From IMG/VR virus record IMGVR_UViG_3300037805_000644, positions 1 to 64,000 of that record: DNA of 64,000 bases; one strand, given 5' to 3'. The translations under genes and the position numbers were made by a program. How positions within the stretch are numbered: the stretch's first letter is position 1; every line of letters starts with the position of its first letter. The notes under the pieces were generated by a model. It did not search any database. It was not told the origin of the DNA and worked only from the letters and a program-made list of their open reading frames with translations. Of this stretch, positions 20,577-30,500 are shown one piece after another.

Positions 20577-21053
20577 TTAGAGGCTGAACTCACCCCCCAC
20601 TGCAACAAGCACGTAACGGCCGGTTTTCCATGCCTGAACCACCAGGGAGGCGGCGACGGAGGCGGCGTCTTCTAGGGGGGCCTCGTAACACTCAGGGGTA
20701 TCTTGGCAAGGGAAACACACCCTCTTGTCGAACAGGAGGCACCCCCCAGACACCCGGCAATCGCGGATGTCTGGGGGGACCATCTTGAGCAACCGCTCCG
20801 GCGGCCTGCCGATGGACCGCATCAGGGGTGTTCCCCGTCCATGGGCCGCGTGGCTCAGGTCTTCACCCTGCACCACGGGGATCAGGTCCTCAAAGGGGGT
20901 ACCTTTAAGGACCCCCAGAACCCCCCAGGCACCGTCAGCATCAGGGATGGGGCGGAGGACCTGGATGGCCCCCCAGTCGGGGGTCGTGAGGGTGAAACGG
21001 CGGATTCCGTCTTCGAGATCAGAAAGCATCAGACCCAGCCTCCATAATCCCAC
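20577..21053 (-). CDS. Cys-rich hypothetical protein
   Basis: ORF packed upstream of the polymerase; several Cys in the C-terminal half. Confidence 0.6.
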   Translation of the reverse strand: MGLWRLGLMLSDLEDGIRRFTLTTPDWGAIQVLRPIPDADGAWGVLGVLKGTPFEDLIPVVQGEDLSHAAHGRGTPLMRSIGRPPERLLKMVPPDIRDCRVSGGCLLFDKRVCFPCQDTPECYEAPLEDAASVAASLVVQAWKTGRYVLVAVGGEFSL

Positions 21054-21241
21054 TCAGTGATGAGGAACATCACCGCCTCACCCTCGTCGTCGGTGACCTG
21101 GTGGTCCTTGGTGGGGCGATCCCACAACCAATCGCGGCGGAGGGTGTACCCCCGCCCTTTGAGGAAAGCCTCTGCCTTGTCCTCCCCGACTCCCTGCACG
21201 CCTCCCCATTTCTCTCTCAGCTCAGGACTCGCTTGTGGCAC
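21029..21241 (-). CDS. Small hypothetical protein
   Basis: GTG at 21241 with AAGGAG SD. Confidence 0.5.
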   Translation of the reverse strand: MPQASPELREKWGGVQGVGEDKAEAFLKGRGYTLRRDWLWDRPTKDHQVTDDEGEAVMFLITEWDYGGWV

Positions 21242-21836
21242 TTGCCCACTCCTTGTATCTCTCCAGGGCACGTCCCCGGAGCTTGGCCAGGGCCAGCCGG
21301 CCCTGGCGTTCATCGAGCCTCTTACCCTTCTCGTCAAGGGTGAGGTAGATAATTTTGTCGTAAGCCTCCCAGAGAGAGGCAGCCAGTTTTGGGGTCAGGT
21401 CCCGCTCCGAGGTGTAGCTCTGGAGCGTTGTCTCCAACGACTTGCGGTCATCCTCGAATGTGCGTCCTGGTTTGAGGGTCTGGGCGACCTCCTCACCCAC
21501 CAACACCCGCCGTTCATCACCAGCCTCCCAGGACATTGCAGGCAGGTTGTAGGTGCGCTCCAACCAGCCGATGGCCTCCATGAATTGGAGGCCGCGTTTC
21601 TCCCGGACGGTCTCGACCTGGTCTCGGGTCTTGTCACAGGCAAAGCAGTACCAGCTCTTGCTCTCAGGGTACACGCGGGCAGAGGGCTTCCCATCCAGCC
21701 CGTCACCGTGGAGATCACAGGAGAACTGCTGTTCCCGATCCATCCCCGTACGGACGGGGTAACCGAAATCCTCCAGGAGCTGGATGATGTCGATCTCTTC
21801 CTTGACCCGTTCGAGGCGTCGCTCAGATCTGCTCAT
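21222..21836 (-). CDS. Primase CHC2 zinc-binding-domain protein (no TOPRIM)
   Basis: ERVKEEIDIIQLL...CDLHGD..KPSARVY..WYCFAC...FMEAIGWL. Confidence 0.85.
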   Translation of the reverse strand: MSRSERRLERVKEEIDIIQLLEDFGYPVRTGMDREQQFSCDLHGDGLDGKPSARVYPESKSWYCFACDKTRDQVETVREKRGLQFMEAIGWLERTYNLPAMSWEAGDERRVLVGEEVAQTLKPGRTFEDDRKSLETTLQSYTSERDLTPKLAASLWEAYDKIIYLTLDEKGKRLDERQGRLALAKLRGRALERYKEWASATSES

Positions 21837-21843
21837 GGTAAGT

Positions 21844-21869
21844 CTACTCCTTTGTGAGGCAGGCTTACC
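21844..21869 (-). promoter_or_regulatory. Promoter motif variant
   Basis: GGTAAG-N14-GAGTAG. Confidence 0.45.
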
Positions 21870-21893
21870 CCTAAAGGTGGAGGAGTAGGGAAT

Positions 21894-21969
21894 TACCCGT
21901 TGAAGAGGGGAGAGTGGGGTGAGGGATACCCATTGAAGAGGGGAGAGTGGGGGGGGTTACCCGTTGAAG
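21894..21969 (+). repeat. 31-33 bp direct repeats
   Basis: TACCC(G/A)TTGAAGAGGGGAGAGTGGGG at 21894 and 21927, partial copy at 21958. Confidence 0.8.
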
Positions 21970-22823
21970 TCGACCACCTTCGCCGGCGTGACCGAGCGGG
22001 GGGTCCACCGCTTGTTGACAGTACCTCTCCCCTCTACCCAGAGACGGGCGCAGGTGGCCAGCCGCAGGTAACACTCACGCCAGGCGTTGTACCCCGCACC
22101 CCACTTGTAGTTCATGACCTCCACGGCCATTTGGGTGGCATCCCGAGCCGGCCCATTTTTGACACCTTCATCTTCAAGTACGGCTTTCCAGAAAGGAACG
22201 ATCTCGGCGCCATAGCGGCGGAGGGTCAGGAAGATACCTGCCATCACATCCGACTTGATCCACTTGGGCAGATCGAGGTTGTCCGCAAGCACCAGCTCCT
22301 CAGACCAATCCTCCACCAACTTTGCCAGGCGCTTGGGGTTGGATCCCGCATGTCGACCACTGGCCTGATCCAGCGCCGACTTCCAGGAACGATTCTTAAA
22401 CCGGCTGCTTTGCAGGCTCAGCCCCATGCCGTTGGCCATCCCCAGGATCAGCTCCCCTGCATCCTTGCCGGCCTCGCGGGAGTCGAACACGTAATAGAGG
22501 TCCAGGAACTCCTGGGGGGACTTAACAACGTATTTTGCCACCCAGAGAGTGGCAGGTGGGGTGAGCTTCCCCTCCTCCCAAAGGGAGGTGCGGGTATGGC
22601 CGTCTACCTTGTAGGTGACGCCTCCGAACTCGACGGCAGCGGTGACTCCGTGGCTGATGTGATCGCTGGCGAGGTGCTTGCGCCGCACCTTCTTGAGCCG
22701 TTTCTCCGTAGGGCGCTGGCGAGGGTGATCGGGCAGACCAGCCCACTCTGCATAGGGCATTTGAACCACGGTGAGGGTGGGGGCGAGGAGGGCAGTGAGT
22801 GGGTTCGTGGTGGTGGTGGGCAT
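21957..22823 (-). CDS. ParB/Srx-like (DGQHR-type) domain protein
   Basis: HPRQR and YKVDGHTR motifs; ATG 22823 with GGAG SD. Confidence 0.6.
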   Translation of the reverse strand: MPTTTTNPLTALLAPTLTVVQMPYAEWAGLPDHPRQRPTEKRLKKVRRKHLASDHISHGVTAAVEFGGVTYKVDGHTRTSLWEEGKLTPPATLWVAKYVVKSPQEFLDLYYVFDSREAGKDAGELILGMANGMGLSLQSSRFKNRSWKSALDQASGRHAGSNPKRLAKLVEDWSEELVLADNLDLPKWIKSDVMAGIFLTLRRYGAEIVPFWKAVLEDEGVKNGPARDATQMAVEVMNYKWGAGYNAWRECYLRLATCARLWVEGRGTVNKRWTPRSVTPAKVVDFNG

Positions 22824-22871
22824 GGTAACTCCAGCATTTTTTTTTGGGGGGGGGTTGATCCCCTCCATGCC

Positions 22872-23753
22872 TTAACTACTATGTGGTGGGCTACCGTTAC
22901 CTCTTTTATCTGGCCCCATGAACATTTCGCAGAATTCAGGGATAGCGATCCTCATCCTTTTTCGGGCAATCTCCAGGTATTTCGGGGAGATATCCACACC
23001 TAAGAAGTCTCTGAGGTTATTGCCGGCAGCAACGCCTGTGGTGCCACTGCCACAGAAAGGGTCAAGAACCAGATCACCCTCTTTGGTGAACAGCTTAACG
23101 AAAAAATCAGGAAGGGCCACTGGGAATGCGGCTGGGTGTCCTAGATTTCGGGTCTCCGTCGGGAGGTGCAGGACATTGCTCGGGAAAACCATTTTCCGGT
23201 CTTTCCAAACCCCCGTGTTTTTCGTGTACCCTGAACCCGTCCCAGACATCACCTGACCAACGCTCTCCCCTTGTGTCCAATCTCCCACCGGAACACGGAC
23301 ATTATCCTGGTACATCAAGAACTTGCGGTTCTTGTTAAACTGTAGGATCCGTTCCCAAGAATCCCTGAAACGATTAGGCCATTTACCCGGTGTGGTGTTC
23401 TTTTTGTGCCAGATGAATTCCTCAGTCCAAATCCACCCCTGAGAGCGCATCGCCTGGATCAAATCCAGAACGTAGGTATGCCGCTCCCCGCGATGCACAT
23501 GCTCCTTGATGTTCACAAGCAGGGTGCCCGAGTCCTCCAACACCCTGTAAAGTTCCAAGGAGACATCCCTCCACCACTCCACGTAATCGTTTGCAGGGAT
23601 GCCCCCGTAAGTGGCTTTCCGCTGAGTTGCATAGGGAGGTGAGGTGAAGATAAGCTGGACACTCCCACTCTCAAGCCCTCCCAACGCCAGGGGCACAGCC
23701 CCTTCAATCAAATCCCACTCAACCACGCTTGTCTCCTTCGGAGTTAGCCGCAT
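22872..23753 (-). CDS. Complete beta-class N4/N6 DNA methyltransferase
   Basis: FTSPPY catalytic motif, HPAAFP, VLDPFCGSGTT SAM-binding motif. Confidence 0.92.
   Translation of the reverse strand: MRLTPKETSVVEWDLIEGAVPLALGGLESGSVQLIFTSPPYATQRKATYGGIPANDYVEWWRDVSLELYRVLEDSGTLLVNIKEHVHRGERHTYVLDLIQAMRSQGWIWTEEFIWHKKNTTPGKWPNRFRDSWERILQFNKNRKFLMYQDNVRVPVGDWTQGESVGQVMSGTGSGYTKNTGVWKDRKMVFPSNVLHLPTETRNLGHPAAFPVALPDFFVKLFTKEGDLVLDPFCGSGTTGVAAGNNLRDFLGVDISPKYLEIARKRMRIAIPEFCEMFMGPDKRGNGSPPHSS
22876..22901 (-). promoter_or_regulatory. Recurrent promoter-like motif
   Basis: GGTAAC-N14-TAGTAG. Confidence 0.7.
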
Positions 23754-24362
23754 GTACAGGTTTCCGGGCCGTCAGAAAGGGCTCCCAGGAGGGGCGCACG
23801 GCTGTGCCGTAACCATCCCAGAACTGGGCCTCCTTTGTGGTGGGTTCAGTGATGTACTGCACCCCTGCCGAACCGGCATCCCCACTGCCAACCAGGGTGT
23901 CGAACCCCCGACCACCCTTGCGCTTAGAGTTCGGGCGACTGGAGGGGTTGACCCCCACCGGCGTCCCCTCGAAACCCAACCGCTTGTCGATGGATTTGCT
24001 GATGTTCAGGTTTTTAGGGAAGCCTGTGCCGTACCCCCAGGCTTCGAGGCTGAGGTCCGTGAACCCCGCCTCCTCAAGGACCTGTGCCAGCCGGTGATAG
24101 GTGCGGGCGGCCGAGAACACCTTGACCACCCCGCCAGGCTTGAGCTTCTGGTAAATGAGGGTCCAGAGATCTGCATCGAAAGCGATCCCCGAGCGGTCCC
24201 ATTTCTTGCCCATGAATCCAATCTCAGGTATTATTACTCGTAGGGGGGATCGGTGATGACAGCGACGATTGAGTCGTCGTCCAGCTCCAGCAGGCGCACT
24301 TGGCAAGCACCCAACCACAGCAGGAATGTCAGATCCCCCCTACGAGCCTTATTTTCCAGCAT
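23719..24362 (-). CDS. Methyltransferase fragment A (catalytic half), interrupted by an 11-nt gap after DPPYE
   Basis: ..DDDSIVAVITDPPYE [TAATAATACCT] (E)IGFMGKKWD..LKPGG..RTYHRL..YGTGFPK..WDGYGTAVRPSWEP..ARKP; 209 aa if the gap is bypassed; no FxGxG. Confidence 0.75.
24237..24346. repeat. Perfect 15-bp inverted repeat of the DPPYE codons
   Basis: CTCGTAGGGGGGATC (24237-24251) / GATCCCCCCTACGAG (24332-24346). Confidence 0.9.
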
Positions 24363-24374
24363 CGAGGGTTCCTC

Positions 24375-25175
24375 ATGAAAGTTCAACGCACATGCCCAAT
24401 ATGCGGCAAGGTCTACAAAGCAGACAGTACCCGGCTCAGGCATGGGAGGCAGACCACCTGCTCTCGTGCTTGCTCTTACTCGCTCCGGGGGGGGAAACGA
24501 GCTACCTCCACTGAGATCACCTGCACCACCTGCGGGAGTTCTTTCACACGCCCCCCCAGCCAGATGAAATCACGCCATGGGGGATCTTTCTGTTCAACTG
24601 AGTGCCATTACAAAGGTCGGGGTCTCGGCCACGTCCAGAGAATCGTGGAGGACGGATATGACCTCACGCCCGAGGGGCGTGCCTCTCTTTCCGTTCGCCG
24701 CAGGGAGGCCAACTTCAAACGCAAAGCCGAAGGCAGATACGGCCACACCGAGGAAACCCGAAAGAAACTCTCAGCCTCAACCGCTAAGGCCATTGCTGAG
24801 GGCCGGATCCCACGAATCTCCAAGTTTGAGCGGGAGGTGGGGGTGGTGCTGAGGAGCTTGGGGGTCAAAGCCCAACCCCAGCACGGCATCCGGGATGCTC
24901 AAGGGAGATTCCGTGCGGTGCTGGATTTCTGGCTGCCCGAGCTGGGGGTAGGTGTGGAAGCCAACGGCACTTTCTGGCACGCCGACCCTCGGGTTTTCCC
25001 CCAAGGCCCGGAGCACGCCAGCCAAAAGCGAACCGCAGAGAGGTATGCCCGGAAAATGGCTCTGTTAAATCTGCGGGGGGTTCCCGTGATCGAGGTGTGG
25101 GAGAAAGATTTCAGGGAGGACCCTAAGGGGGCCGTTCAGGATGCCCTTCGAGGTCTCAACGCCCCTGGTGATTGA
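24375..25175 (+). mobile_element. Vsr/DUF559-like homing endonuclease with Zn-ribbon repeats and NUMOD3
   Basis: CPICG..CSRAC, CTTCG..FCSTEC, HTEETRKKLS, SKFE..LDF..VEANGTFWH..IEVWE. Confidence 0.85.
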
Positions 25176-25249
25176 GGGGGCCGGGATCCGGCTTTATCGA
25201 TGGCGTCCCGTGCTCGGGCTTTCTGATCTCGTACTCGGCTCATCCCCAT
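25136..25249 (-). CDS. Short ORF behind a promoter; possible orphaned N-terminus of fragment A
   Basis: MGMSRVRDQKARARDAIDKAGSRPPQ runs into the endonuclease 3' end. Confidence 0.35.
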   Translation of the reverse strand: MGMSRVRDQKARARDAIDKAGSRPPQSPGALRPRRAS

Positions 25250-25271
25250 ACCCTTCCGGTGGTCTAGGGGA

Positions 25272-25298
25272 CTACTCAAAACAGGGGTGAGTGTTACC
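25272..25298 (-). promoter_or_regulatory. Promoter motif variant
   Basis: GGTAAC-N15-GAGTAG. Confidence 0.55.
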
Positions 25299-25572
25299 AG
25301 CCCTGGCGGTTGACCGAGCAGGCGTCGATCTCCCCACAGGAGCTGATCTTGGCGAGGCAGGTGGGGTTGAGGGCGTGCCCTCGGGACTGGGTGTCCTCAC
25401 AGAACTGCTGGCAGCTCATCCCGTTGCCCAGGGGCTCACCCTCGGGGCAGCCCAGGTCTGCCATGCGGACACAGGCCGGCTTGCACTGGTCAGTGTCGTT
25501 GGGCTCCACGGGTTTGGGCTGGGGAGCCCCACAGCCCATAAGGAGCAGGACCATCAGGATGATTCGGCTCAT
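25294..25572 (-). CDS. Cys-rich lipoprotein
   Basis: MSRIILMVLLLMG|C lipobox followed by eight further Cys. Confidence 0.8.
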   Translation of the reverse strand: MSRIILMVLLLMGCGAPQPKPVEPNDTDQCKPACVRMADLGCPEGEPLGNGMSCQQFCEDTQSRGHALNPTCLAKISSCGEIDACSVNRQGW

Positions 25573-26816
25573 GGTGTGAAGCTCGCGAAGTTCAAGATGG
25601 TCATGTTGAGCATGGAGGCACTATGCAAGGCCCCTGCCTCATTGTCCGTCAGGATGGGGAAAGTGTCCCCATCCCCCATCCTGAGCCACGCCTGCATGTC
25701 TGCCACGAAAGGCTTGGCGTTCAGATCGTCAGGAGAGCCGCCGTTGTAAAGGCTGGTGACATTGGCACCACTCAGCTCCACATCGAAGTAAGCCCACTCG
25801 TTGATGTAACCCAGCAACCAGTTTGCCTCCCCCTGCCCTCCCTGTGCCCTTCCGATGCGGAAAGACCCGGACCCTCCAGCACTCCCTGTCATGTTGTTTT
25901 CATTCGTGGTGTTTACCTGGAGTGCCCCATCCACATAGATCTTGATCCCGGCCGGGGTCTCCGTGCCGTCATTGGTGACCACGAGGTGGTACCAAGTGTT
26001 CCCGAGAAGGGTGCCGGCCTCAACCTCCAAGCTGGTGTTTTTGCTGTCCTTGAAACGAACTACAAGCTCACCCGAGACCTTGACCTCGAAAGCGATGTTA
26101 TCGTTTTTGGATCCGAAAGCCCAGATGTCGGAATCCACGAGGGTAAGGAGATGCACCCACTGGGAGATCGACCACGCCTGACTGGAGTCCCGCTCAATAG
26201 CCGCAGTGGTCGTGACATCAAGGTACTGCTTGAAACTAGGACCGTCAAAGCGTACTGAGTTGGTGTCCGAAAACCCCGGCCCAGATGCCAGCACCGTGAG
26301 GTTCAGATTGGCGGTGGTGGTCCCGTTCCCGTTGACTGCGGTGATCGGAATCACCACGGCACCCACAACTGTGGTCGATCCAAAAATGGTGCCCAGCTCA
26401 TTGTTGACGGCCAGGCCAAGGGGCAGCCCTGAGGCGTCAAAGTAAGTGGGGCCCTCTGTGGCGACAATCTGGTAATTGAAAGGCTGGCTTGCCACCACAC
26501 TCTCAGTGAGAGAGGAGGTGATCGTGGGCTTGTTCCCCCCGGGGCCCCCGCCAGCCAGGGCGTTGAACTCGGCGTTGAGGTAATTGACCACCTCGCCCAC
26601 GTTCGCACCCGCCGCCGTTCCGTCCTGTTTCAGTACCTCCGTGAAAGGTGCGGAAGCAATCTCCCGCCACCCCACGGGTCCATGCAGGTCGTAGATGTCG
26701 ATGAGGCCATCATCATCCTCAACTGCCTGGAGCGAGTTGGTGAATTTGGTGGCGACAGTGGAGGGGTCAAACACCACTGACCCTGCCTCATTGTCCCTGT
26801 AGATTTTGACTGCCAC
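25569..26816 (-). CDS. Ig-like plus LamG/ConA domain protein, likely virion-associated
   Basis: PTITS..FNYQIVA..SGLPLGLAVN..GTIFG; WYHLVVT.DG..IYVDG..IGR..GYINE. Confidence 0.8.
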   Translation of the reverse strand: MAVKIYRDNEAGSVVFDPSTVATKFTNSLQAVEDDDGLIDIYDLHGPVGWREIASAPFTEVLKQDGTAAGANVGEVVNYLNAEFNALAGGGPGGNKPTITSSLTESVVASQPFNYQIVATEGPTYFDASGLPLGLAVNNELGTIFGSTTVVGAVVIPITAVNGNGTTTANLNLTVLASGPGFSDTNSVRFDGPSFKQYLDVTTTAAIERDSSQAWSISQWVHLLTLVDSDIWAFGSKNDNIAFEVKVSGELVVRFKDSKNTSLEVEAGTLLGNTWYHLVVTNDGTETPAGIKIYVDGALQVNTTNENNMTGSAGGSGSFRIGRAQGGQGEANWLLGYINEWAYFDVELSGANVTSLYNGGSPDDLNAKPFVADMQAWLRMGDGDTFPILTDNEAGALHSASMLNMTILNFASFTP

Positions 26817-26826
26817 GGTAAAACCC

Positions 26827-27570
26827 TTAGAAGTGCTTGATAAAGAAACCGTTTACCGTCACCGAGGCGGCGGCACTGCACAAGACCTCGATGGTGGCGC
26901 CTGCCGCCAACACCTGTTCTGAGCCGATGTAGAATTGCAGGGTTTCCACTCGGGGGTAAGCAACCCCAGCACCCTCATCGAGAGAGGACAACCCCTTGGT
27001 CAACTGGAATCCCCCAAAGGCAGGGAAATTCAGGCGGACGGACAGCCGTGCGTTGTTCACTGTCGGTGTGACGGTGAAGTCTGCACGAAACAGCAGCACA
27101 TCACCCACCGTCAGGTCATCAAACAGGAGGGCGTTCCCCACGGTGTCCCACAGCTCCTCAACACCTGTCGGTGCCCAGGTTTTGGTGGTCTGGGGCCCAA
27201 GGCCATCGTTTGTCAGAGGCGTCCAGGTGTCTGCCACCAGCGCGAGGGGGGCTGCGATTGTCCCCAGATCGTTGTAATCCATGAAACCAAACCACTCCTG
27301 GGTGGCTCGGTGCATTTCGGACCCCACTTTGAAGAGTGCTGTGATCAACCCCCGATCAATGAACCCCCGTAGGACTCCGCTCTCGTAAGAGGCTGCCACG
27401 TCGCTGGAGTAAAACAACTCCAGCGTTCCCGTGGTCGGGACATAGACGCCACCAGCCCGGACGGAACCGCCAGCCCGGCCCCTCCCCAGGTCATTAACCA
27501 CGATGTCCTGGATCAGCAAGGGTGCCGCGCCCCCAACCAGGGTTACCTCAATGTATGGTCCAAAAGCCAT
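26827..27570 (-). CDS. Putative structural beta-rich protein
   Basis: GAGGAGG SD; jelly-roll-like composition. Confidence 0.55.
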   Translation of the reverse strand: MAFGPYIEVTLVGGAAPLLIQDIVVNDLGRGRAGGSVRAGGVYVPTTGTLELFYSSDVAASYESGVLRGFIDRGLITALFKVGSEMHRATQEWFGFMDYNDLGTIAAPLALVADTWTPLTNDGLGPQTTKTWAPTGVEELWDTVGNALLFDDLTVGDVLLFRADFTVTPTVNNARLSVRLNFPAFGGFQLTKGLSSLDEGAGVAYPRVETLQFYIGSEQVLAAGATIEVLCSAAASVTVNGFFIKHF

Positions 27571-27608: not shown

Positions 27609-28406
27609 TTATTCACGGTAAGGCTCAAAGCCCTCCTGGGCAACCCAGAAATCCTTGGAGGTGGGGGAAGCAATCAGCTCAGGAGACACGAGGCCATACC
27701 CGTCATCTCCCCAGGTCACCCCCCAGGAGTTCTCGATGAGGAACATGCCGTCCACATAGCCCACGATAACGACGGCATGGAGACCTACCCGGTCCTCTCG
27801 GGGGACCGGCTTGAGGGGGACCAGGGGACCTTTGCTCTTGTAGTGCTGGTACCAGTTGTCCCCCACATTGGTGCCGAACACCACAGGGTTTCCCGCCCGC
27901 AAGCAGTTGATCACCTCGGTGACCCGAGCGGCACCCGTGGACCGGATTTTGAAATAGCTCTCGATCTTGTGGAGGTAAGCAACCCGCAAAGACATGAAGC
28001 TCGGGGGGGTGTTCACCTTGTCGAGGTCGAACGGCCAGTTGGCCTCAGGGGGCACACCGAACCGACGCAGCACATTGAAGGCGTGGCTGACATACGTCCC
28101 CTCATCGTTGTGGGTCTCGGGGGGGCTCATCAGCTCTCGGGCCAGGTAATAAACGGCCAGGCGACTCAGATCCACATGGGCTGCCAGGCCGTGCTTCTGG
28201 ATGCGCTTGATCTCCAACGCCTTGATGCAGGCGTTGGCTACACAAGAGTTGGACCACCTCTGGTCATGGCGGGGCCCCGAGAAAGGGCGGAGGTCAGCAT
28301 CGCCGGAATCCTCATAAACCATTTGTGCCTTGAGGCTGTCCTCATACGACCAATGGCTAGGGTTGTCCGGTTCCTCCCGGAACCCCTTCAACGTGATCGG
28401 GTTCAT
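27609..28406 (-). CDS. Papain-like (C1) cysteine peptidase
   Basis: DQ..SNSCVANA, HAVVIVGY, ENSWG..WGDDGYG. Confidence 0.9.
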   Translation of the reverse strand: MNPITLKGFREEPDNPSHWSYEDSLKAQMVYEDSGDADLRPFSGPRHDQRWSNSCVANACIKALEIKRIQKHGLAAHVDLSRLAVYYLARELMSPPETHNDEGTYVSHAFNVLRRFGVPPEANWPFDLDKVNTPPSFMSLRVAYLHKIESYFKIRSTGAARVTEVINCLRAGNPVVFGTNVGDNWYQHYKSKGPLVPLKPVPREDRVGLHAVVIVGYVDGMFLIENSWGVTWGDDGYGLVSPELIASPTSKDFWVAQEGFEPYRE

Positions 28407-28656
28407 CGTGGATCCTCACCTGTTTGAAATAACCAGAAGCCCCGGGGAGTACCCTCTCCAGCTCGGGGATAGGGCAACCCTTGGCGCAGAACGACTTGGA
28501 GCATCCTGCCTTATGGACCAGGATCACATTGGCACCAAACCCACCAGAGGGCAAGCGGCTGCCATCAATGTTGACGGCACCTGTCCCGTGGGTTTCAACA
28601 TTGGCGACGATACTGGGCTCGCCGAGGGGCTTGCGGAGCATGTGGATCACGTACAT
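28357..28656 (-). CDS. Methyltransferase fragment B (central region)
   Basis: LRKPL..SIVANV..HGTGAVNIDGSR..ANVIL.H..C..GCPI..L..GASGYF. Confidence 0.75.
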   Translation of the reverse strand: MYVIHMLRKPLGEPSIVANVETHGTGAVNIDGSRLPSGGFGANVILVHKAGCSKSFCAKGCPIPELERVLPGASGYFKQVRIHDEPDHVEGVPGGTGQP

Positions 28657-30500
28657 CAGTCTTCCCCAAACATGGCGTCAAACAGGTCGGGCTCTTCGGG
28701 ATCAGGCTCGCTTTCGTGCCTCTGATCAGTTGCCAGATCGAGCTTGCGGTACCCGGGGAGCCTTTGGTCCCAGTGCTCAATGCGGTTGGTGGAGATCTCC
28801 ACGTACTCCGGGGTCATGTCGATGCCCGTGAAATCGTGGCCTGTCCTCAAGCAGGCAACTCCTGTGCTGCCTGACCCCATGAAAGGGTCCACCACCCGGC
28901 CCCTTGGCACATCCCGCAGCAGGGTCTGCATGAGCCTCCAGGGTTTTACTGTGTTGTGACTCATCCCTACTGCCGTCTGAAACGTAGGGCAGTCCCGTAC
29001 CGTGAGGTTCCACACATCACCTTTGTAAGGGGTCGGGGTGATCCCTTGAACATAGGAGAGCCGGTATTCCACGCTTTCATGTTCCAGGATGGTGGGTCGG
29101 GTAGGTTTACGGCGCTCCTGCTCCCGGTCCAAGGCGTAAAAGCGCATTTGGTACGACGGCAGGGTCTCCTTGAACTTCCGACTCCCAATTTTGCCCGGCT
29201 GCGCCCCATAGCGGTGCAGGTTGCCCTTAGACCCCAGGGCCTCCCCCAGCAAACGCATCTGCGAGGCGAGATCTGGAGAGACGGTTTTAGCCTGGCGGTA
29301 TGTCCTCACCTTGCCGCCATCTCCTGCCATGTACCCCTCGAACACTGCTTGCCAAGTGGACCGCTGCCGTTGCCAGATCGTGGGGGGTAGCCGCTTGTTC
29401 GACGCCCCACACGGGGACCATTCCCGGAACTGCCCCCCGACCTCCGGGTCGAACCCGATGACCTGGACTGCCTTGGTTCCCTTTTTCGGGTACTCCCCCA
29501 GATTGAATCCCCGACCCTCAAAAAACCGACGAAGCCGGTTGATGTAGTCCGTCTCGTCCTGGTGGAGAGTGAACGAGGGGTACACGTTGGAACCGTGTCC
29601 CGCACGCTGGAGCACACCCTCTGCCAGCCACAACCCGAATACCCACCACCACTCATCCGGCCGGTCGTCCTTGATCCCTATGTCCACCAGCAGAGGGGTC
29701 ATCGTGTAATCCCCTCTGCGGATCGCTTGAGCCTCCACCCACCCCACGTTACCGCCGGTGATGTTCTTGCCTTTCCGGGTGGGCCTCCAGATGAGGAACG
29801 GGTGGTTGTCTGATGCCAGGGTGGTGTAGTTCGTCCCCTGCACTGCGATCTCGTACAGGTGGTCGCTAGTGTACGGGTGGTGGCTGATGTCCTCAATGGC
29901 GTGGAAACGCCCATCCGACCCCAACACCCGGTGGGCCAGGGTGACCTCAGAGATGGGCCGGTACCCTTGTTCTGTCATCACGAAAGCATCAGGGTGCAGG
30001 CAAGGGTGGTGATTCTTGACCCCCTGGGCCGTTCGGGAAGCCCCTGCCCGAGGGCTCTTGAGGCCGTCCGACCCTTCCTTACGCCCAGTGGCAGCGGCGC
30101 CAGTCTGCTCAGGTAGACCCTGGCACCCTGCCTCACGCTCAGCTCGGCTGACCTTGGCCATGTAGTGGAAAGGATCGGAGGCGTCATCGACCACCAGGAA
30201 CGTATCCCGGACCTGGAAGCCCCCGTCCTCCAGGTTGACCGCCCCCTTGTGCCCAATGGGGTTGTCCTCAGGGGCAACCACCATGAGGTGCGCCCCCGGC
30301 TTGAGGACCCTCAGCAGTTGGACGGTCATGGCCTTGTCAGGGGTCCCCACGACGAGGAGACCTGTTAGGGCTCCATCGGCGATGGAGCCCCAGTCCACCT
30401 TGGACATGTTGGGGATGAACACTGCCTCAAGATAGGGCTCGGGAGGGCTCAGGAACGTCCGTAGATAGTCGGACAAGCCCTTGGGGATAGGACGGCTCAT
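28656..30500 (-). CDS. Methyltransferase fragment C (SAM-binding half) with intein
   Basis: Degenerate LRVLKPGAHL..EDGGFQVRD; FHYMAKVSRAEREAG..NHHP|TVKP..VVDPFMGSGSTG; no DPPY. Confidence 0.85.
   Translation of the reverse strand: MSRPIPKGLSDYLRTFLSPPEPYLEAVFIPNMSKVDWGSIADGALTGLLVVGTPDKAMTVQLLRVLKPGAHLMVVAPEDNPIGHKGAVNLEDGGFQVRDTFLVVDDASDPFHYMAKVSRAEREAGCQGLPEQTGAAATGRKEGSDGLKSPRAGASRTAQGVKNHHPCLHPDAFVMTEQGYRPISEVTLAHRVLGSDGRFHAIEDISHHPYTSDHLYEIAVQGTNYTTLASDNHPFLIWRPTRKGKNITGGNVGWVEAQAIRRGDYTMTPLLVDIGIKDDRPDEWWWVFGLWLAEGVLQRAGHGSNVYPSFTLHQDETDYINRLRRFFEGRGFNLGEYPKKGTKAVQVIGFDPEVGGQFREWSPCGASNKRLPPTIWQRQRSTWQAVFEGYMAGDGGKVRTYRQAKTVSPDLASQMRLLGEALGSKGNLHRYGAQPGKIGSRKFKETLPSYQMRFYALDREQERRKPTRPTILEHESVEYRLSYVQGITPTPYKGDVWNLTVRDCPTFQTAVGMSHNTVKPWRLMQTLLRDVPRGRVVDPFMGSGSTGVACLRTGHDFTGIDMTPEYVEISTNRIEHWDQRLPGYRKLDLATDQRHESEPDPEEPDLFDAMFGED
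28953..30002 (-). mobile_element. Intein (350 aa) with LAGLIDADG endonuclease
   Basis: CLHPDAFV...MSHN|T; FGLWLAEG and FEGYMAGDG. Confidence 0.92.

What the first reader, a model, noticed from the sequence alone, without database searches (positions are those of the whole stretch)
24360..25298. Antisense Vsr-like homing endonuclease head-to-head with the hopped gene: possible mobile cassette
Seen: the endonuclease ATG (24375, +) and the MTase ATG (24362, -) are 12 nt apart around a near-palindromic GAGGGTTCCTC that supplies an SD-like sequence on each strand. A promoter motif (25272-25298) and a short ORF (25136..25249) point into the endonuclease from the far side. Established: T4 mobA and the gene 60 gap move together, with the gap protecting the cut site, and Vsr-like endonucleases occur in fractured phage genes. 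Inference: the enzyme cuts intact DPPYE-IG alleles, the gap gives immunity, and the short ORF is the displaced original N-terminus.
Basis: partly seen in the sequence, partly recalled or inferred. Interest (0 to 1): 0.72.

Follow-up and report, generated by a model that had tools for sequence, protein, structure and literature searches.

The report
Homing endonuclease with ribosome-hop gap
A selfish DNA-cutting enzyme gene sits back-to-back with a marine phage's DNA methylase gene, and wherever it occurs the methylase's catalytic motif carries a short insertion that ribosomes most likely hop over, a second natural example of the phage T4 gene 60 arrangement.

Summary
The ORF at 24375-25175(+) is real. 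It is a free-standing homing endonuclease with two zinc ribbons and a Vsr-like nuclease domain (model pLDDT 93; best PDB matches Vsr and I-Bth0305I). Its ATG lies 12 nt from the methylase ATG across GAGG-N3-CCTC, as described.

The cassette idea holds up in comparisons. Ten diverged lineages carry the full Vsr-type enzyme head-to-head with this methylase, and all have an 8-20 nt insertion right after the DPPYx codon. Four relatives share its DNA-binding domain, two of them shown to carry a LAGLIDADG or HNH nuclease. Their junctions are also disrupted.

No unbroken junction has a full endonuclease: eight lineages of the same phage clade and 80 distant family members. The closest relative is the window minus exactly these 14 nt.

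The gap looks decoded. A stop follows the take-off codon in 19 of 21 lineages, and take-off and landing codons are synonymous in 15 of 21. They also change together. An RNA helix covering the Pro-Pro-Tyr and take-off codons shows compensatory changes and is absent from unbroken alleles.

Not supported: the promoter at 25272-25298, and the short ORF as a displaced N-terminus. The cleavage site and the bypassing itself remain untested.

The parts
24375..25175 (+). Free-standing homing endonuclease gene (266 aa, P0001), antisense to all its neighbours. Residues 1-117 (24375-24725) hold two CxxC...CxxxC zinc-ribbon modules, the presumed DNA-binding domain. Residues about 145-262 (24807-25160) form the Vsr-like nuclease domain.
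   Evidence: Translation. PHROG homing/HNH endonuclease families. 110 homologues besides the window's own gene, with 8 invariant or near-invariant Cys plus E152, D184, E195, H202 and E243. AlphaFold model pLDDT 93. Foldseek best matches Vsr 1cw0 and I-Bth0305I 3r3p. Profile against PDB gives Vsr at E 7.6e-5, with D184 on the Vsr DF motif and H202 on FWH.
24363..24374 (.). 12-nt divergent spacer CGAGGGTTCCTC (GAGG-N3-CCTC) that supplies a Shine-Dalgarno-like element on each strand.
   Evidence: Similar compact spacers in relatives: L092 12 nt (GGAG...CCTC) and L093 14 nt.
24234..24362 (-). Methylase ORF A: 42 codons ending DPPYE followed by TAA TAA. Its first 10 or so codons (MLENKARRGD) are an N-terminal extension found only in endonuclease-linked alleles and two unbroken relatives.
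   Evidence: (phrog_67/6025 DNA methyltransferase).
24332..24347 (-). 5' arm of the long-range RNA helix (GCUCGUAGGGGGGAUC), inside the codons for K-A-R-R-G-D.
   Evidence: 161-nt fold -67.4 kcal/mol, z -4.9.
24236..24251 (-). 3' arm of the helix (GAUCCCCCCUACGAGU). It covers the Asp-Pro-Pro-Tyr codons, the take-off codon GAG (24239-24237) and the first base of the stop.
   Evidence: The paired positions covary across 15 lineages. Position 5 shows all four Watson-Crick pairs. 101 of 120 cells are paired against 82.4 in shuffles, and 0 of 20000 shuffles reach the observed value.
24223..24236 (-). 14-nt coding gap TAATAATACCTGAG. It holds two stop codons and TACCT, and ends with the landing codon GAG (24225-24223). 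Decoding resumes at ATT (24222).
   Evidence: Absent from 80 distant family members, which read DPPYE[LI]GFMGKKWD or a variant. Absent from the closest relative L182, which differs here by exactly this indel.
23719..24222 (-). Methylase ORF B (IGFMGKKWD...WEPFLTARKP plus 12 aa). Together with ORF A it forms the N-terminal (DPPY) half of a beta-class N6/N4 DNA methylase. It ends just after the ARKP motif, as in the four clade relatives whose ORF end was read.
24206..24234 (+). Promoter-like site TTGCCC-17-TATTAT pointing at the endonuclease. The -10 element is the reverse complement of the gap. The -35 element is the reverse complement of the Gly-Lys codons of FMGK.
   Evidence: It is the only + strand hit in 2.1 kb. 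The equivalent hit in L092 is TTGCCC-18-TATACT with TG. L093 reads TTGACA-17-TATAAC by eye. L264 and L267 read TGnTATAGT. This part is a lead, not an established feature.

Best explanation
The ORF encodes a free-standing homing endonuclease: a tandem zinc-ribbon DNA-binding domain joined to a Vsr-like nuclease. It has settled immediately upstream of, and antisense to, the DPPY half of a phage DNA methylase gene.

It travels with a short non-coding insertion, 14 nt in this window, placed right after the DPPYx codon, the most conserved stretch of the gene.

Inferred mechanism, step 1: the enzyme recognises the uninterrupted junction of endonuclease-free alleles and cuts at or near it. Repair from the endonuclease-bearing genome then copies the segment from the gap to the endonuclease, about 0.95 kb.

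Step 2: the insertion breaks up the target in the carrier genome without changing the catalytic motif of the protein.

Step 3: the methylase is still made, because the peptidyl-tRNA on the take-off codon (GAG, followed by UAA UAA) leaves the mRNA and re-pairs with the matching GAG 14 nt downstream. This gives DPPYE-IGFMGKKWD.

Step 4: an RNA helix whose 3' arm is the Pro-Pro-Tyr and take-off codons re-forms behind the ribosome and biases the slide forwards.

What is shown: the fold and family of the enzyme, the anatomy, the cross-genome linkage, the codon matching and the helix covariation.

What is inferred: the cleavage site, the immunity and the bypassing itself.
For: Enzyme:
- Vsr and I-Bth0305I are the best fold and profile matches.
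- The catalytic Asp and His are invariant in 72 homologues.
- Homologues at 41-49% identity sit beside typical homing targets: DNA polymerase A, 5'-3' exonuclease, Prim-Pol, ThyX and another methylase.
- The same N-domain is fused to LAGLIDADG (L234) or HNH (L136) at the same position.
- Stumps of 36 aa remain in L205 and L182.

Linkage:
- 14 of 14 endonuclease-bearing lineages have a disrupted junction: 13 gaps of 7-20 nt and one in-frame 15-nt insertion.
- Eight clade lineages and 80 distant relatives with unbroken junctions have no full endonuclease.
- Fisher p = 0.0016 within the clade on the 12-lineage count, before L226 and L233 were added.
- L182 (peptidase 75% identical) equals the window minus the 14 nt.

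Decoding:
- A stop codon follows the take-off codon directly in 19 of 21 gapped lineages.
- Take-off and landing codons are synonymous in 15 of 21 and change together (Glu/Glu, Gly/Gly, Asp/Asp, Leu/Leu).
- The three codons between landing and the ATG vary only synonymously or conservatively ([LI][ESGA]F).
- Gap lengths of 6-20 nt include both in-frame and out-of-frame values, so no single frameshift explains them.
- In L267 a stop in the downstream frame excludes a -1 shift.

Helix:
- 9-16 bp in 18 of 19 gapped alleles measured. It is long-range where the endonuclease is present and a local hairpin where it is absent. Unbroken alleles show only 6-9 bp, many of them G-U (Mann-Whitney p = 0.0003).
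- Compensatory changes alter the N-terminal peptide (RRG, RRA, HRE, HRV, RKA) to follow the synonymous choice in the Pro-Pro-Tyr codons.
- G-U pairs occur only in the methylase sense.

Precedent: the T4 mobA/gene 60 cassette, and pairing of exiting mRNA as the driver of forward bypassing (papers read).
Against: - No cleavage data exist. The target could lie elsewhere in the methylase 5' region.
- The linkage is one-way. Five lineages keep a 6-9 nt gap without the endonuclease, so the gap may have a use of its own, such as throttling methylase synthesis.
- Six of 21 gapped lineages lack a synonymous landing codon (L089, L213, L227, L233, L234, L260).
- The lineages share ancestry, so the counts overstate independence.
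- The endonuclease has the same G+C content as the genome (0.598 against 0.603), and its identity between lineages (50-58%) is about that of neighbouring genes. Long vertical residence is therefore as likely as recent mobility.
- The helix would also suit a termination-reinitiation model.
- The methylase ORF ends after ARKP and needs a partner for the SAM-binding half, which has not been identified.
- Only one DNA run spans the junction and no RNA data were found.
Confidence: 0.6

Rival explanations
1. The endonuclease and its linkage to the gap are as described, but the gap is not bypassed. The methylase N-domain is truly split into a 42-aa DPPY peptide and a second polypeptide. The second is started by termination-reinitiation at the conserved ATG of FMGK, 23 nt past the stop in this window. 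The two then assemble, as in other endonuclease-fractured phage genes.
For: An ATG follows the gap in every lineage, and gene callers split the gene there. Endonuclease-split genes that still work are known: T4 gp39/gp60 and Aeh1 NrdA (paper text). Mycobacteriophage Seagreen has a homologous endonuclease between two methylase ORFs. A helix re-forming behind a terminating ribosome could also favour downstream reinitiation.
Against: This model gives no reason for take-off and landing codons to be synonymous in 15 of 21 lineages and to change together. It also gives no reason for the three codons before the ATG to keep family-consensus residues through synonymous changes. The Shine-Dalgarno-like GGAG, where present, lies only 3 nt from the ATG. 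The split would fall inside the catalytic loop.
Confidence: 0.2
2. The gap and the frame break are damage, and the methylase N-domain gene is a decaying pseudogene next to a resident, possibly inactive, endonuclease.
For: The gene is interrupted by stops and lacks the SAM-binding half. A complete methylase follows directly at 22872-23753.
Against: The same interrupted architecture is kept in more than 20 lineages whose proteins are only 40-55% identical. Motifs remain intact on both sides, and there are no further lesions. A covarying RNA helix is tied to the gap. Unbroken clade members also end after ARKP, so the truncation is the normal form.
Confidence: 0.05
3. The nuclease is not selfish. 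It is the cutting partner of a phage restriction-modification pair, or a Vsr-type mismatch nickase serving the neighbouring methylase.
For: Nuclease and methylase genes are adjacent and divergently arranged. Vsr genes classically accompany methylase genes. Several sources annotate homologues as G:T mismatch repair endonuclease.
Against: The methylase is of the DPPY (N6-A/N4-C) type, not a C5 methylase whose product deaminates to T:G. Close relatives keep the methylase but lack the nuclease, or hold only stumps of it. The nuclease domain is exchanged for LAGLIDADG or HNH behind the same DNA-binding domain. Family members sit beside unrelated replication genes.
Confidence: 0.05
4. The insertion is maintained mainly because its reverse complement supplies the -10 element (often with TGn) of the endonuclease's own promoter, with the -35 element coming from the antisense of the FMGK codons. 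Target disruption and bypassing are then secondary consequences.
For: The only + strand promoter-like hits lie exactly there in the window and in L092. L093 reads TTGACA-17-TATAAC, and L264 and L267 read TGnTATAGT. The conserved TACC of the long gaps is GGTA on the other strand. Endonuclease-free alleles keep only short gaps that lack this motif.
Against: The motif is weak or absent in L089, L113 and L122. The host and its promoter type are unknown. A consensus match is not evidence of function. This reading does not compete with the immunity or bypass roles and could hold alongside them.
Confidence: 0.35

Closest known systems
Phage T4 mobA / gene 60 bypass cassette (Bonocora et al. 2011 PNAS; Manning and Atkins, bioRxiv 10.1101/2022.08.31.505936)
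   Same: A free-standing homing endonuclease sits next to a non-coding insertion in a highly conserved part of an essential-type enzyme gene. A stop follows directly after the take-off codon. Take-off and landing codons match. An N-terminal extension is added by the element. The endonuclease is lost step by step while the gap is retained, and then the gap is lost too.
   Different: The host gene is different (DNA methylase, not topoisomerase II large subunit) and the nuclease is different (Vsr-like, not HNH MobA). The endonuclease is antisense and upstream rather than splitting the gene. The gap is 6-20 nt instead of 50 nt. The helix lies 5' of the take-off site and contains the take-off codon, rather than being a take-off stem-loop inside the gap. 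No sequence similarity was seen.
EDxHD (Vsr-like) homing endonucleases: I-Bth0305I (PMC3239194) and the fractured-gene endonucleases (PMC2677866)
   Same: The C-terminal Vsr-like nuclease fold (3r3p, TM 0.70 over the solved domain) with the conserved Asp and His. A two-part architecture with an N-terminal DNA-binding region. Occurrence in phage genes and in genes in pieces.
   Different: The N-terminal region here is two Cys4 zinc ribbons, not NUMOD2/helix-turn-helix motifs. The gene is neither intron- nor intein-borne, and no split intein flanks it. Sequence similarity to I-Bth0305I is marginal (E 0.0076).
Hef of T-even-type phages and the 'Hef-like' endonucleases of Campylobacter phages
   Same: Free-standing, Vsr-like, intergenic phage endonucleases. 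The Campylobacter phage genes are the annotated relatives found in the phage collection (24-25% identity over about 90% of the protein).
   Different: Distant in sequence, located beside other genes, and no coding gap has been reported for them.
Mycobacteriophage Seagreen gp72-gp73-gp74 and relatives (Donovan, Fishburne and others)
   Same: A homologous 266-aa endonuclease (27% identity, same length and zinc-ribbon repeats) lies antisense within a methylase of the same family (DPPYGLEFMGKDWD).
   Different: There it lies between the N-terminal 411-aa ORF and the C-terminal 85-aa ORF, just before the position of the usual HPTVKP motif. The DPPY junction is unbroken.
Synthetic short 'stop-hops' in E. 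coli (CUU-UAG-CUA type; reviewed in PMC5009743)
   Same: A peptidyl-tRNA re-pairs to a synonymous codon a few nucleotides past a stop. L200/L201 read CTT-TGA-CTG, the same design.
   Different: Those were laboratory constructs of low efficiency. The review states that no natural in-frame stop-hopping was known at the time.

Membership tests
Vsr-like (EDxHD) homing endonucleases | C-terminal nuclease domain with the Vsr fold | tested here: met
   Model pLDDT 93. Foldseek: 1cw0 E 1.9e-4, 3r3p TM 0.70. Profile against PDB: Vsr E 7.6e-5.
Vsr-like (EDxHD) homing endonucleases | Conserved catalytic Asp and His of Vsr (D51, H69), plus further acidic residues of the composite EDxHD motif | tested here: inconclusive
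   D184 aligns with the Vsr DF Asp and H202 with the FWH His. Both are invariant in 72 sequences, as are E152, E195 and E243. The equivalent of the third acidic residue (Vsr D97) could not be assigned, and the motif reads WHAD, not HD.
Vsr-like (EDxHD) homing endonucleases | N-terminal NUMOD2/helix-turn-helix DNA-binding modules | tested here: not met
   The N-terminal 117 residues are two CxxC...CxxxC zinc ribbons (8 invariant or near-invariant Cys). No NUMOD hit in Pfam.
Homing endonuclease (functional class) | Sporadic presence among close relatives, degenerate copies, and modular exchange of domains | tested here: met
   Present in 10 lineages. Absent in L175, L190, L192, L196, L202 and others. 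Stumps in L182 and L205. LAGLIDADG and HNH versions exist at the same site.
Homing endonuclease (functional class) | Cuts the endonuclease-free allele near its insertion site and is copied into it | not testable with these tools
   Needs cleavage assays and mixed infections.
Gene 60-type programmed translational bypass | [quoted passage not shown] | tested here: met
   GAG/GAG in the window. Synonymous pairs in 15 of 21 lineages, changing together among Glu, Gly, Asp and Leu.
Gene 60-type programmed translational bypass | [quoted passage not shown] | tested here: met
   TAA TAA in the window. TAA, TAG or TGA in 19 of 21 gapped lineages. The exceptions are L227, which has no stop there, and L233, whose TGA lies one codon earlier, right after Tyr.
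Gene 60-type programmed translational bypass | Take-off stem-loop formed by the 5' part of the gap, and a 50-nt gap in the topoisomerase gene with MobA | tested here: not met
   The gap is 14 nt (range 6-20). The conserved helix lies 5' of the gap and contains the take-off codon. The gene is a methylase and the nuclease is Vsr-like.
Gene 60-type programmed translational bypass | Nascent-peptide signal in the exit tunnel | not tested
   The N-terminal extension carries Arg-Arg, but its residues follow the RNA pairing (RRG, RRA, HRE, HRV, RKA). That argues for an RNA constraint rather than a peptide constraint.
Gene 60-type programmed translational bypass | A single polypeptide made across the gap | not testable with these tools
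   Needs protein analysis. No RNA or proteomic data were found.
Type II restriction-modification pair | Nuclease and methylase co-inherited as a unit | tested here: not met
   The methylase is conserved in clade members that lack the nuclease.

The most novel reading that the evidence does not exclude
A widespread clade of marine phages uses programmed short-range ribosome hopping (6-20 nt, over a stop codon) to read a DNA methylase gene. An upstream RNA helix that contains the take-off codon drives the hop. The gap arose as self-immunity for a Vsr-like homing endonuclease, and its reverse complement also provides the -10 box of that endonuclease's promoter. If so, this would be the first natural family of stop-hops. 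It would also be a second, independent origin of the endonuclease-plus-bypass cassette, with every stage of the homing cycle preserved in metagenomes.
Probability: 0.45. Interest if true: 0.92.

Novelty: new variant of a known kind. Interest (0 to 1): 0.82.

Why it matters
Programmed translational bypassing has rested almost entirely on T4 gene 60 and its homologues in topoisomerase genes, plus yeast mitochondrial elements. A 2016 review states that no natural in-frame stop-hopping was known.

This window offers an unrelated system with about 20 natural variants. They differ in gap length (6-20 nt), in frame, in codon pair and in helix geometry (long-range or local). That amounts to a ready-made mutational series for three open questions:
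- What makes a peptidyl-tRNA take off.
- How far a ribosome can slide.
- Whether refolding of mRNA at the exit drives the movement.

It also provides independent support for the idea that bypass gaps evolve as immunity for homing endonucleases. Alleles are preserved at each stage: full endonuclease with a long gap, a stump with the gap, no endonuclease with a short gap, and a clean revertant.

For annotation, methylase genes of this phage clade are currently called as a 42-45 aa ORF plus a truncated ORF.

Tried and rejected
- Single-sequence scans of viral contigs with the endonuclease or the peptidase found almost nothing. Alignments were needed.
It was repeated without that row.
- MAFFT put the 5' helix arm in different columns (A5, A6). 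I therefore did not use the count of structure pairs. I registered the helix without gaps in a script and shuffled 5' arms among sequences as the control.
- A -1 frameshift is rejected as the general mechanism. No slippery site exists at the take-off codon. The in-frame gaps (6, 9, 12, 15 nt) contain stops. L267 and L260 have a stop in the downstream frame before the landing site. A slip on the CCCCCC run would destroy the DPPY motif.
- An alternative genetic code was not invoked. All three stop codons occur at the gap, and ordinary genes in the window end on them.
- Assembly error is rejected: two further assemblies are identical across the stretch and a fourth shows the same gene layout.
- Laying public runs gave no variant and no RNA. 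Only one seawater DNA run spans the junction.
- The short ORF as a displaced N-terminus and the promoter at 25272-25298 are rejected.
- Complex prediction was not used. Docking ORF A onto ORF B would be expected under both the bypass and the split-protein models, so it would not discriminate between them.
Full report
**Setting.** The window is the first 64 kb of a 222,939-bp IMG/VR virus record. The stretch 20719-27213 is base-for-base identical in two other public assemblies. A fourth assembly shows the same gene layout, though its DNA could not be fetched. Runs that hold the sequence are seawater metagenomes. Around the finding every gene is on the minus strand except the ORF in question. 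Going down the minus strand, the genes are:
- a 614-aa methylase ORF with an intein (30500-28656);
- a 99-aa ORF;
- a papain-like peptidase (28406-27609);
- two structural-looking genes;
- a 92-aa Cys-rich gene (25572-25294);
- the antisense endonuclease;
- the two-piece methylase N-domain (24362-23719);
- a complete SPPY methylase (23753-22872);
- a primase zinc-finger gene.

**The observation.**
- The endonuclease ATG (24375) and the methylase ATG (24362, minus strand) are separated by the 12 nt CGAGGGTTCCTC. This is an interrupted palindrome that gives each start codon a Shine-Dalgarno-like element at normal spacing.
- The enzyme (266 aa) has two Cys4 zinc ribbons and a C-terminal domain. 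That domain matches Vsr by profile (E 7.6e-5).
- In a confident model (pLDDT 93) the best fold matches are Vsr and the catalytic domain of the homing endonuclease I-Bth0305I.
- The claimed promoter at 25272-25298 is not found by the consensus scan.
- The short ORF at 25136-25279 has no counterpart in any related locus.

**What the methylase looks like elsewhere.** Eighty viral contigs encode relatives of ORF B at 40-49% identity.
- All 80 have an uninterrupted junction: 75 read DPPYE[LI]GFMGKKWD, and the rest are variants with Gly or a longer in-frame stretch.
- Where the ORF is complete they are mostly about 360-510 aa, with the SAM-binding half.
- None has a homologue of the endonuclease within 4 kb.

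The window therefore differs from its family by a 14-nt insertion after the Glu codon (TAATAATACCTGAG, 24236-24223). The insertion begins with two stops, ends with a second GAG, and shifts the frame.

**Linkage.** Homologues of the endonuclease at 49-58% identity were traced to their contigs.
- In ten distinct lineages the enzyme lies head-to-head with a 42-45 codon ORF ending DPPY[GED]-stop. These are the window, L089, L092, L093, L097/L265, L113, L122/L266, L184, L264 and L267.
- In each, a gap of 8-20 nt follows, and then the codons for [LI][ESGA]FM[GS]K.WD.
- Four further lineages have an endonuclease with the same N-terminal domain. In L234 it is joined to a LAGLIDADG nuclease and in L136 to an HNH nuclease. 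In L226 and L233 the nuclease type was not examined.
- These four have gaps of 9, 17 and 9 nt (L234, L226, L233). L136 has an in-frame 15-nt insertion at the same place.
- An unbiased sample of the phage clade, anchored on the neighbouring peptidase gene, shows the other states.
- No endonuclease with an unbroken junction: L175, L190, L192, L196, L202, L209, L230 and L261.
- No endonuclease with a short gap of 6-9 nt: L183, L200, L204, L206 and L213.
- Endonuclease stump or fragment with a gap: L205 and L260.
- The closest relative of all is L182 (peptidase 75% identical). It has a 36-aa endonuclease remnant in the right place and orientation. Its junction equals the window's with exactly the 14 nt removed.
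- So the endonuclease implies a disrupted junction (14 of 14), but not the reverse. Fisher p is 0.0016 within the clade for the 12 endonuclease-bearing lineages counted at that stage, treating lineages as independent, which overstates the case.

**Is the gap decoded?** Four lines of evidence say that ribosomes cross it.
1. A stop codon follows the take-off codon directly in 19 of 21 gapped lineages. The exceptions are L227, which has no stop there, and L233, whose TGA comes one codon earlier, right after Tyr.
2. The codon just before decoding resumes is synonymous with the take-off codon in 15 of 21 lineages. The pair changes in concert:
   - GAG/GAG;
   - GGT/GGA, GGT/GGC, GGA/GGC, GGT/GGT, GGC/GGC and GGA/GGA;
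   - GAT/GAC;
   - CTT/CTG.

   The binomial probability was about 6e-13 for the 14 of 19 counted at that stage, with a 7% chance per lineage.
3. The three codons between the landing site and the ATG vary only synonymously or within the family's residues. This is not expected of an untranslated spacer at this divergence.
4. Gap lengths are 6, 7, 8, 9, 10, 12, 14, 15, 17 and 20 nt. No single frameshift or read-through covers them all, and in L260 and L267 a stop in the downstream frame lies before the landing codon.

Six lineages lack a matched codon, which is the main weakness.

**The RNA helix.** In the window a 16-bp helix pairs GCUCGUAGGGGGGAUC (24347-24332) with GAUCCCCCCUACGAGU (24251-24236). 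The first arm lies in codons 5-10. The second covers the Asp-Pro-Pro-Tyr codons, the take-off codon and the first base of the stop. The 161-nt fold has z = -4.9.
- Endonuclease-linked alleles have the same long-range helix (9-16 bp). Its 5' arm sits in an N-terminal extension that most endonuclease-free alleles lack.
- The peptide encoded there changes (RRG, RRA, HRE, HRV, RKA) exactly as needed to stay complementary to the synonymous choice in the Pro-Pro-Tyr codons.
- One pair shows all four Watson-Crick combinations. Overall 101 of 120 cells pair, against 82 when 5' arms are shuffled among sequences, and 0 of 20000 shuffles reach the observed value.
- Endonuclease-free gapped alleles instead form a local 9-16 bp hairpin with the same 3' arm (z = -6.5, -4.9 and -2.8 for the three folded).
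- Unbroken alleles have nothing comparable (z = +0.9 and -0.5).
- G-U pairs occur only in the methylase sense, so the methylase mRNA is the selected molecule.
- Because its 3' arm must leave the ribosome before the helix can close, refolding would pull the mRNA forward by roughly the length of the gap. This is the driver proposed for gene 60 by Wills and co-workers. That step is inference.

**A second possible role of the gap.** The only + strand promoter-like site in 2.1 kb is TTGCCC-17-TATTAT at 24206-24234.
- Its -10 element is the reverse complement of the gap. Its -35 element is the reverse complement of the Gly-Lys codons.
- L092 gives the same hit with an extended -10.
- L093 reads TTGACA-17-TATAAC, and L264 and L267 read TGnTATAGT.
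- The motif is weak in three lineages, and the host's promoters are unknown. I record this as a lead only.

**Rivals.**
- A true split with reinitiation at the conserved ATG remains possible (about 0.2).
- A pseudogene is unlikely given conservation across more than 20 lineages.
- A restriction-modification or repair role does not fit the sporadic distribution, the stumps or the domain swaps.
- Other family members sit beside DNA polymerase A, 5'-3' exonuclease, Prim-Pol, ThyX and another methylase, as free-standing homing endonucleases do.

**Comparison and novelty.**
- The enzyme is a new member of the Vsr-like homing endonucleases, with a different DNA-binding domain.
- The cassette works like T4 mobA/gene 60 but is not a member of that family. 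The gene, the nuclease, the gap length and the RNA signal all differ.
- In the papers I could search, bypassing is reported only for topoisomerase genes, a candidate Streptomyces phage case and yeast mitochondria.

I rate it a new variant of a known kind, with high interest. Its central mechanistic steps still need the bench tests listed under decisive next steps.

Noticed in passing
window 28953-30002 (minus strand), inside the ORF 30500-28656: A 350-aa intein-like insert (Cys after ...NHHP; ...SHN then TVKP) with a LAGLIDADG-like motif splits the HPTVKP motif of a second methylase ORF. Relatives L175 and L182 have the same gene without the insert. The Pfam intein hit is below threshold.
   Followed up: partly
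window 23719-24362, 28357-28656 and 28656-30500 (all minus strand): The DPPY methylase seems to be encoded in pieces. The N-domain ORF ends just after ARKP, as it does in the relatives whose ORF end was read. A 99-aa ORF begins at an RKP motif and carries the HGTGAVNID segment. The 614-aa ORF carries a degenerate N-part and the SAM-binding motif. In L182 a copy of the 99-aa segment follows the N-domain directly in another frame. How these pieces assemble is unknown.
   Followed up: partly
L092 2166-3836, L175 9427-10914, L205 7996-9081; by tblastn gap also L113 and L122: In relatives, the methylase N-domain ORF carries an additional intein between GYG and SGFPK. The window's copy does not have it.
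   Followed up: no
L002 (Mycobacterium phage Seagreen) 2596-4927; also Donovan, Fishburne, Malithi and others: A 266-aa homologue of the endonuclease, annotated vsr, lies antisense between the 411-aa N-terminal and 85-aa C-terminal ORFs of a methylase of the same family. The N-terminal ORF ends in a tail resembling that of the L136 methylase.
   Followed up: partly
L200 4047-4080 and L201 2214-2250: The junction reads GGG CTT TGA CTG GAG TTC ATG. This is a 6-nt Leu-stop-Leu arrangement identical in design to the classic synthetic CUU-UAG-CUA stop-hop. No upstream endonuclease is present.
   Followed up: no
L213 337, L227 5376, L233 3110: In three lineages the gap lies one codon earlier, between Tyr and Gly. 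There is no matching landing codon, and in L227 there is no stop at the gap start. These do not fit the simple hop rule.
   Followed up: no
window 23719-23753: The complete SPPY methylase gene (ATG 23753) overlaps the end of the N-domain ORF by 35 nt. A six-frame search extended the similarity to a mycobacteriophage methylase past the stop through three TGA codons. I read this as a weak alignment extension, not as evidence of recoding.
   Followed up: partly
L204 5545-5610: In this endonuclease-free gapped allele, the predicted fold pairs the gap and landing region with sequence upstream of the main hairpin. This extends the helix beyond the take-off codon (-44.9 kcal/mol, z -6.5).
   Followed up: no
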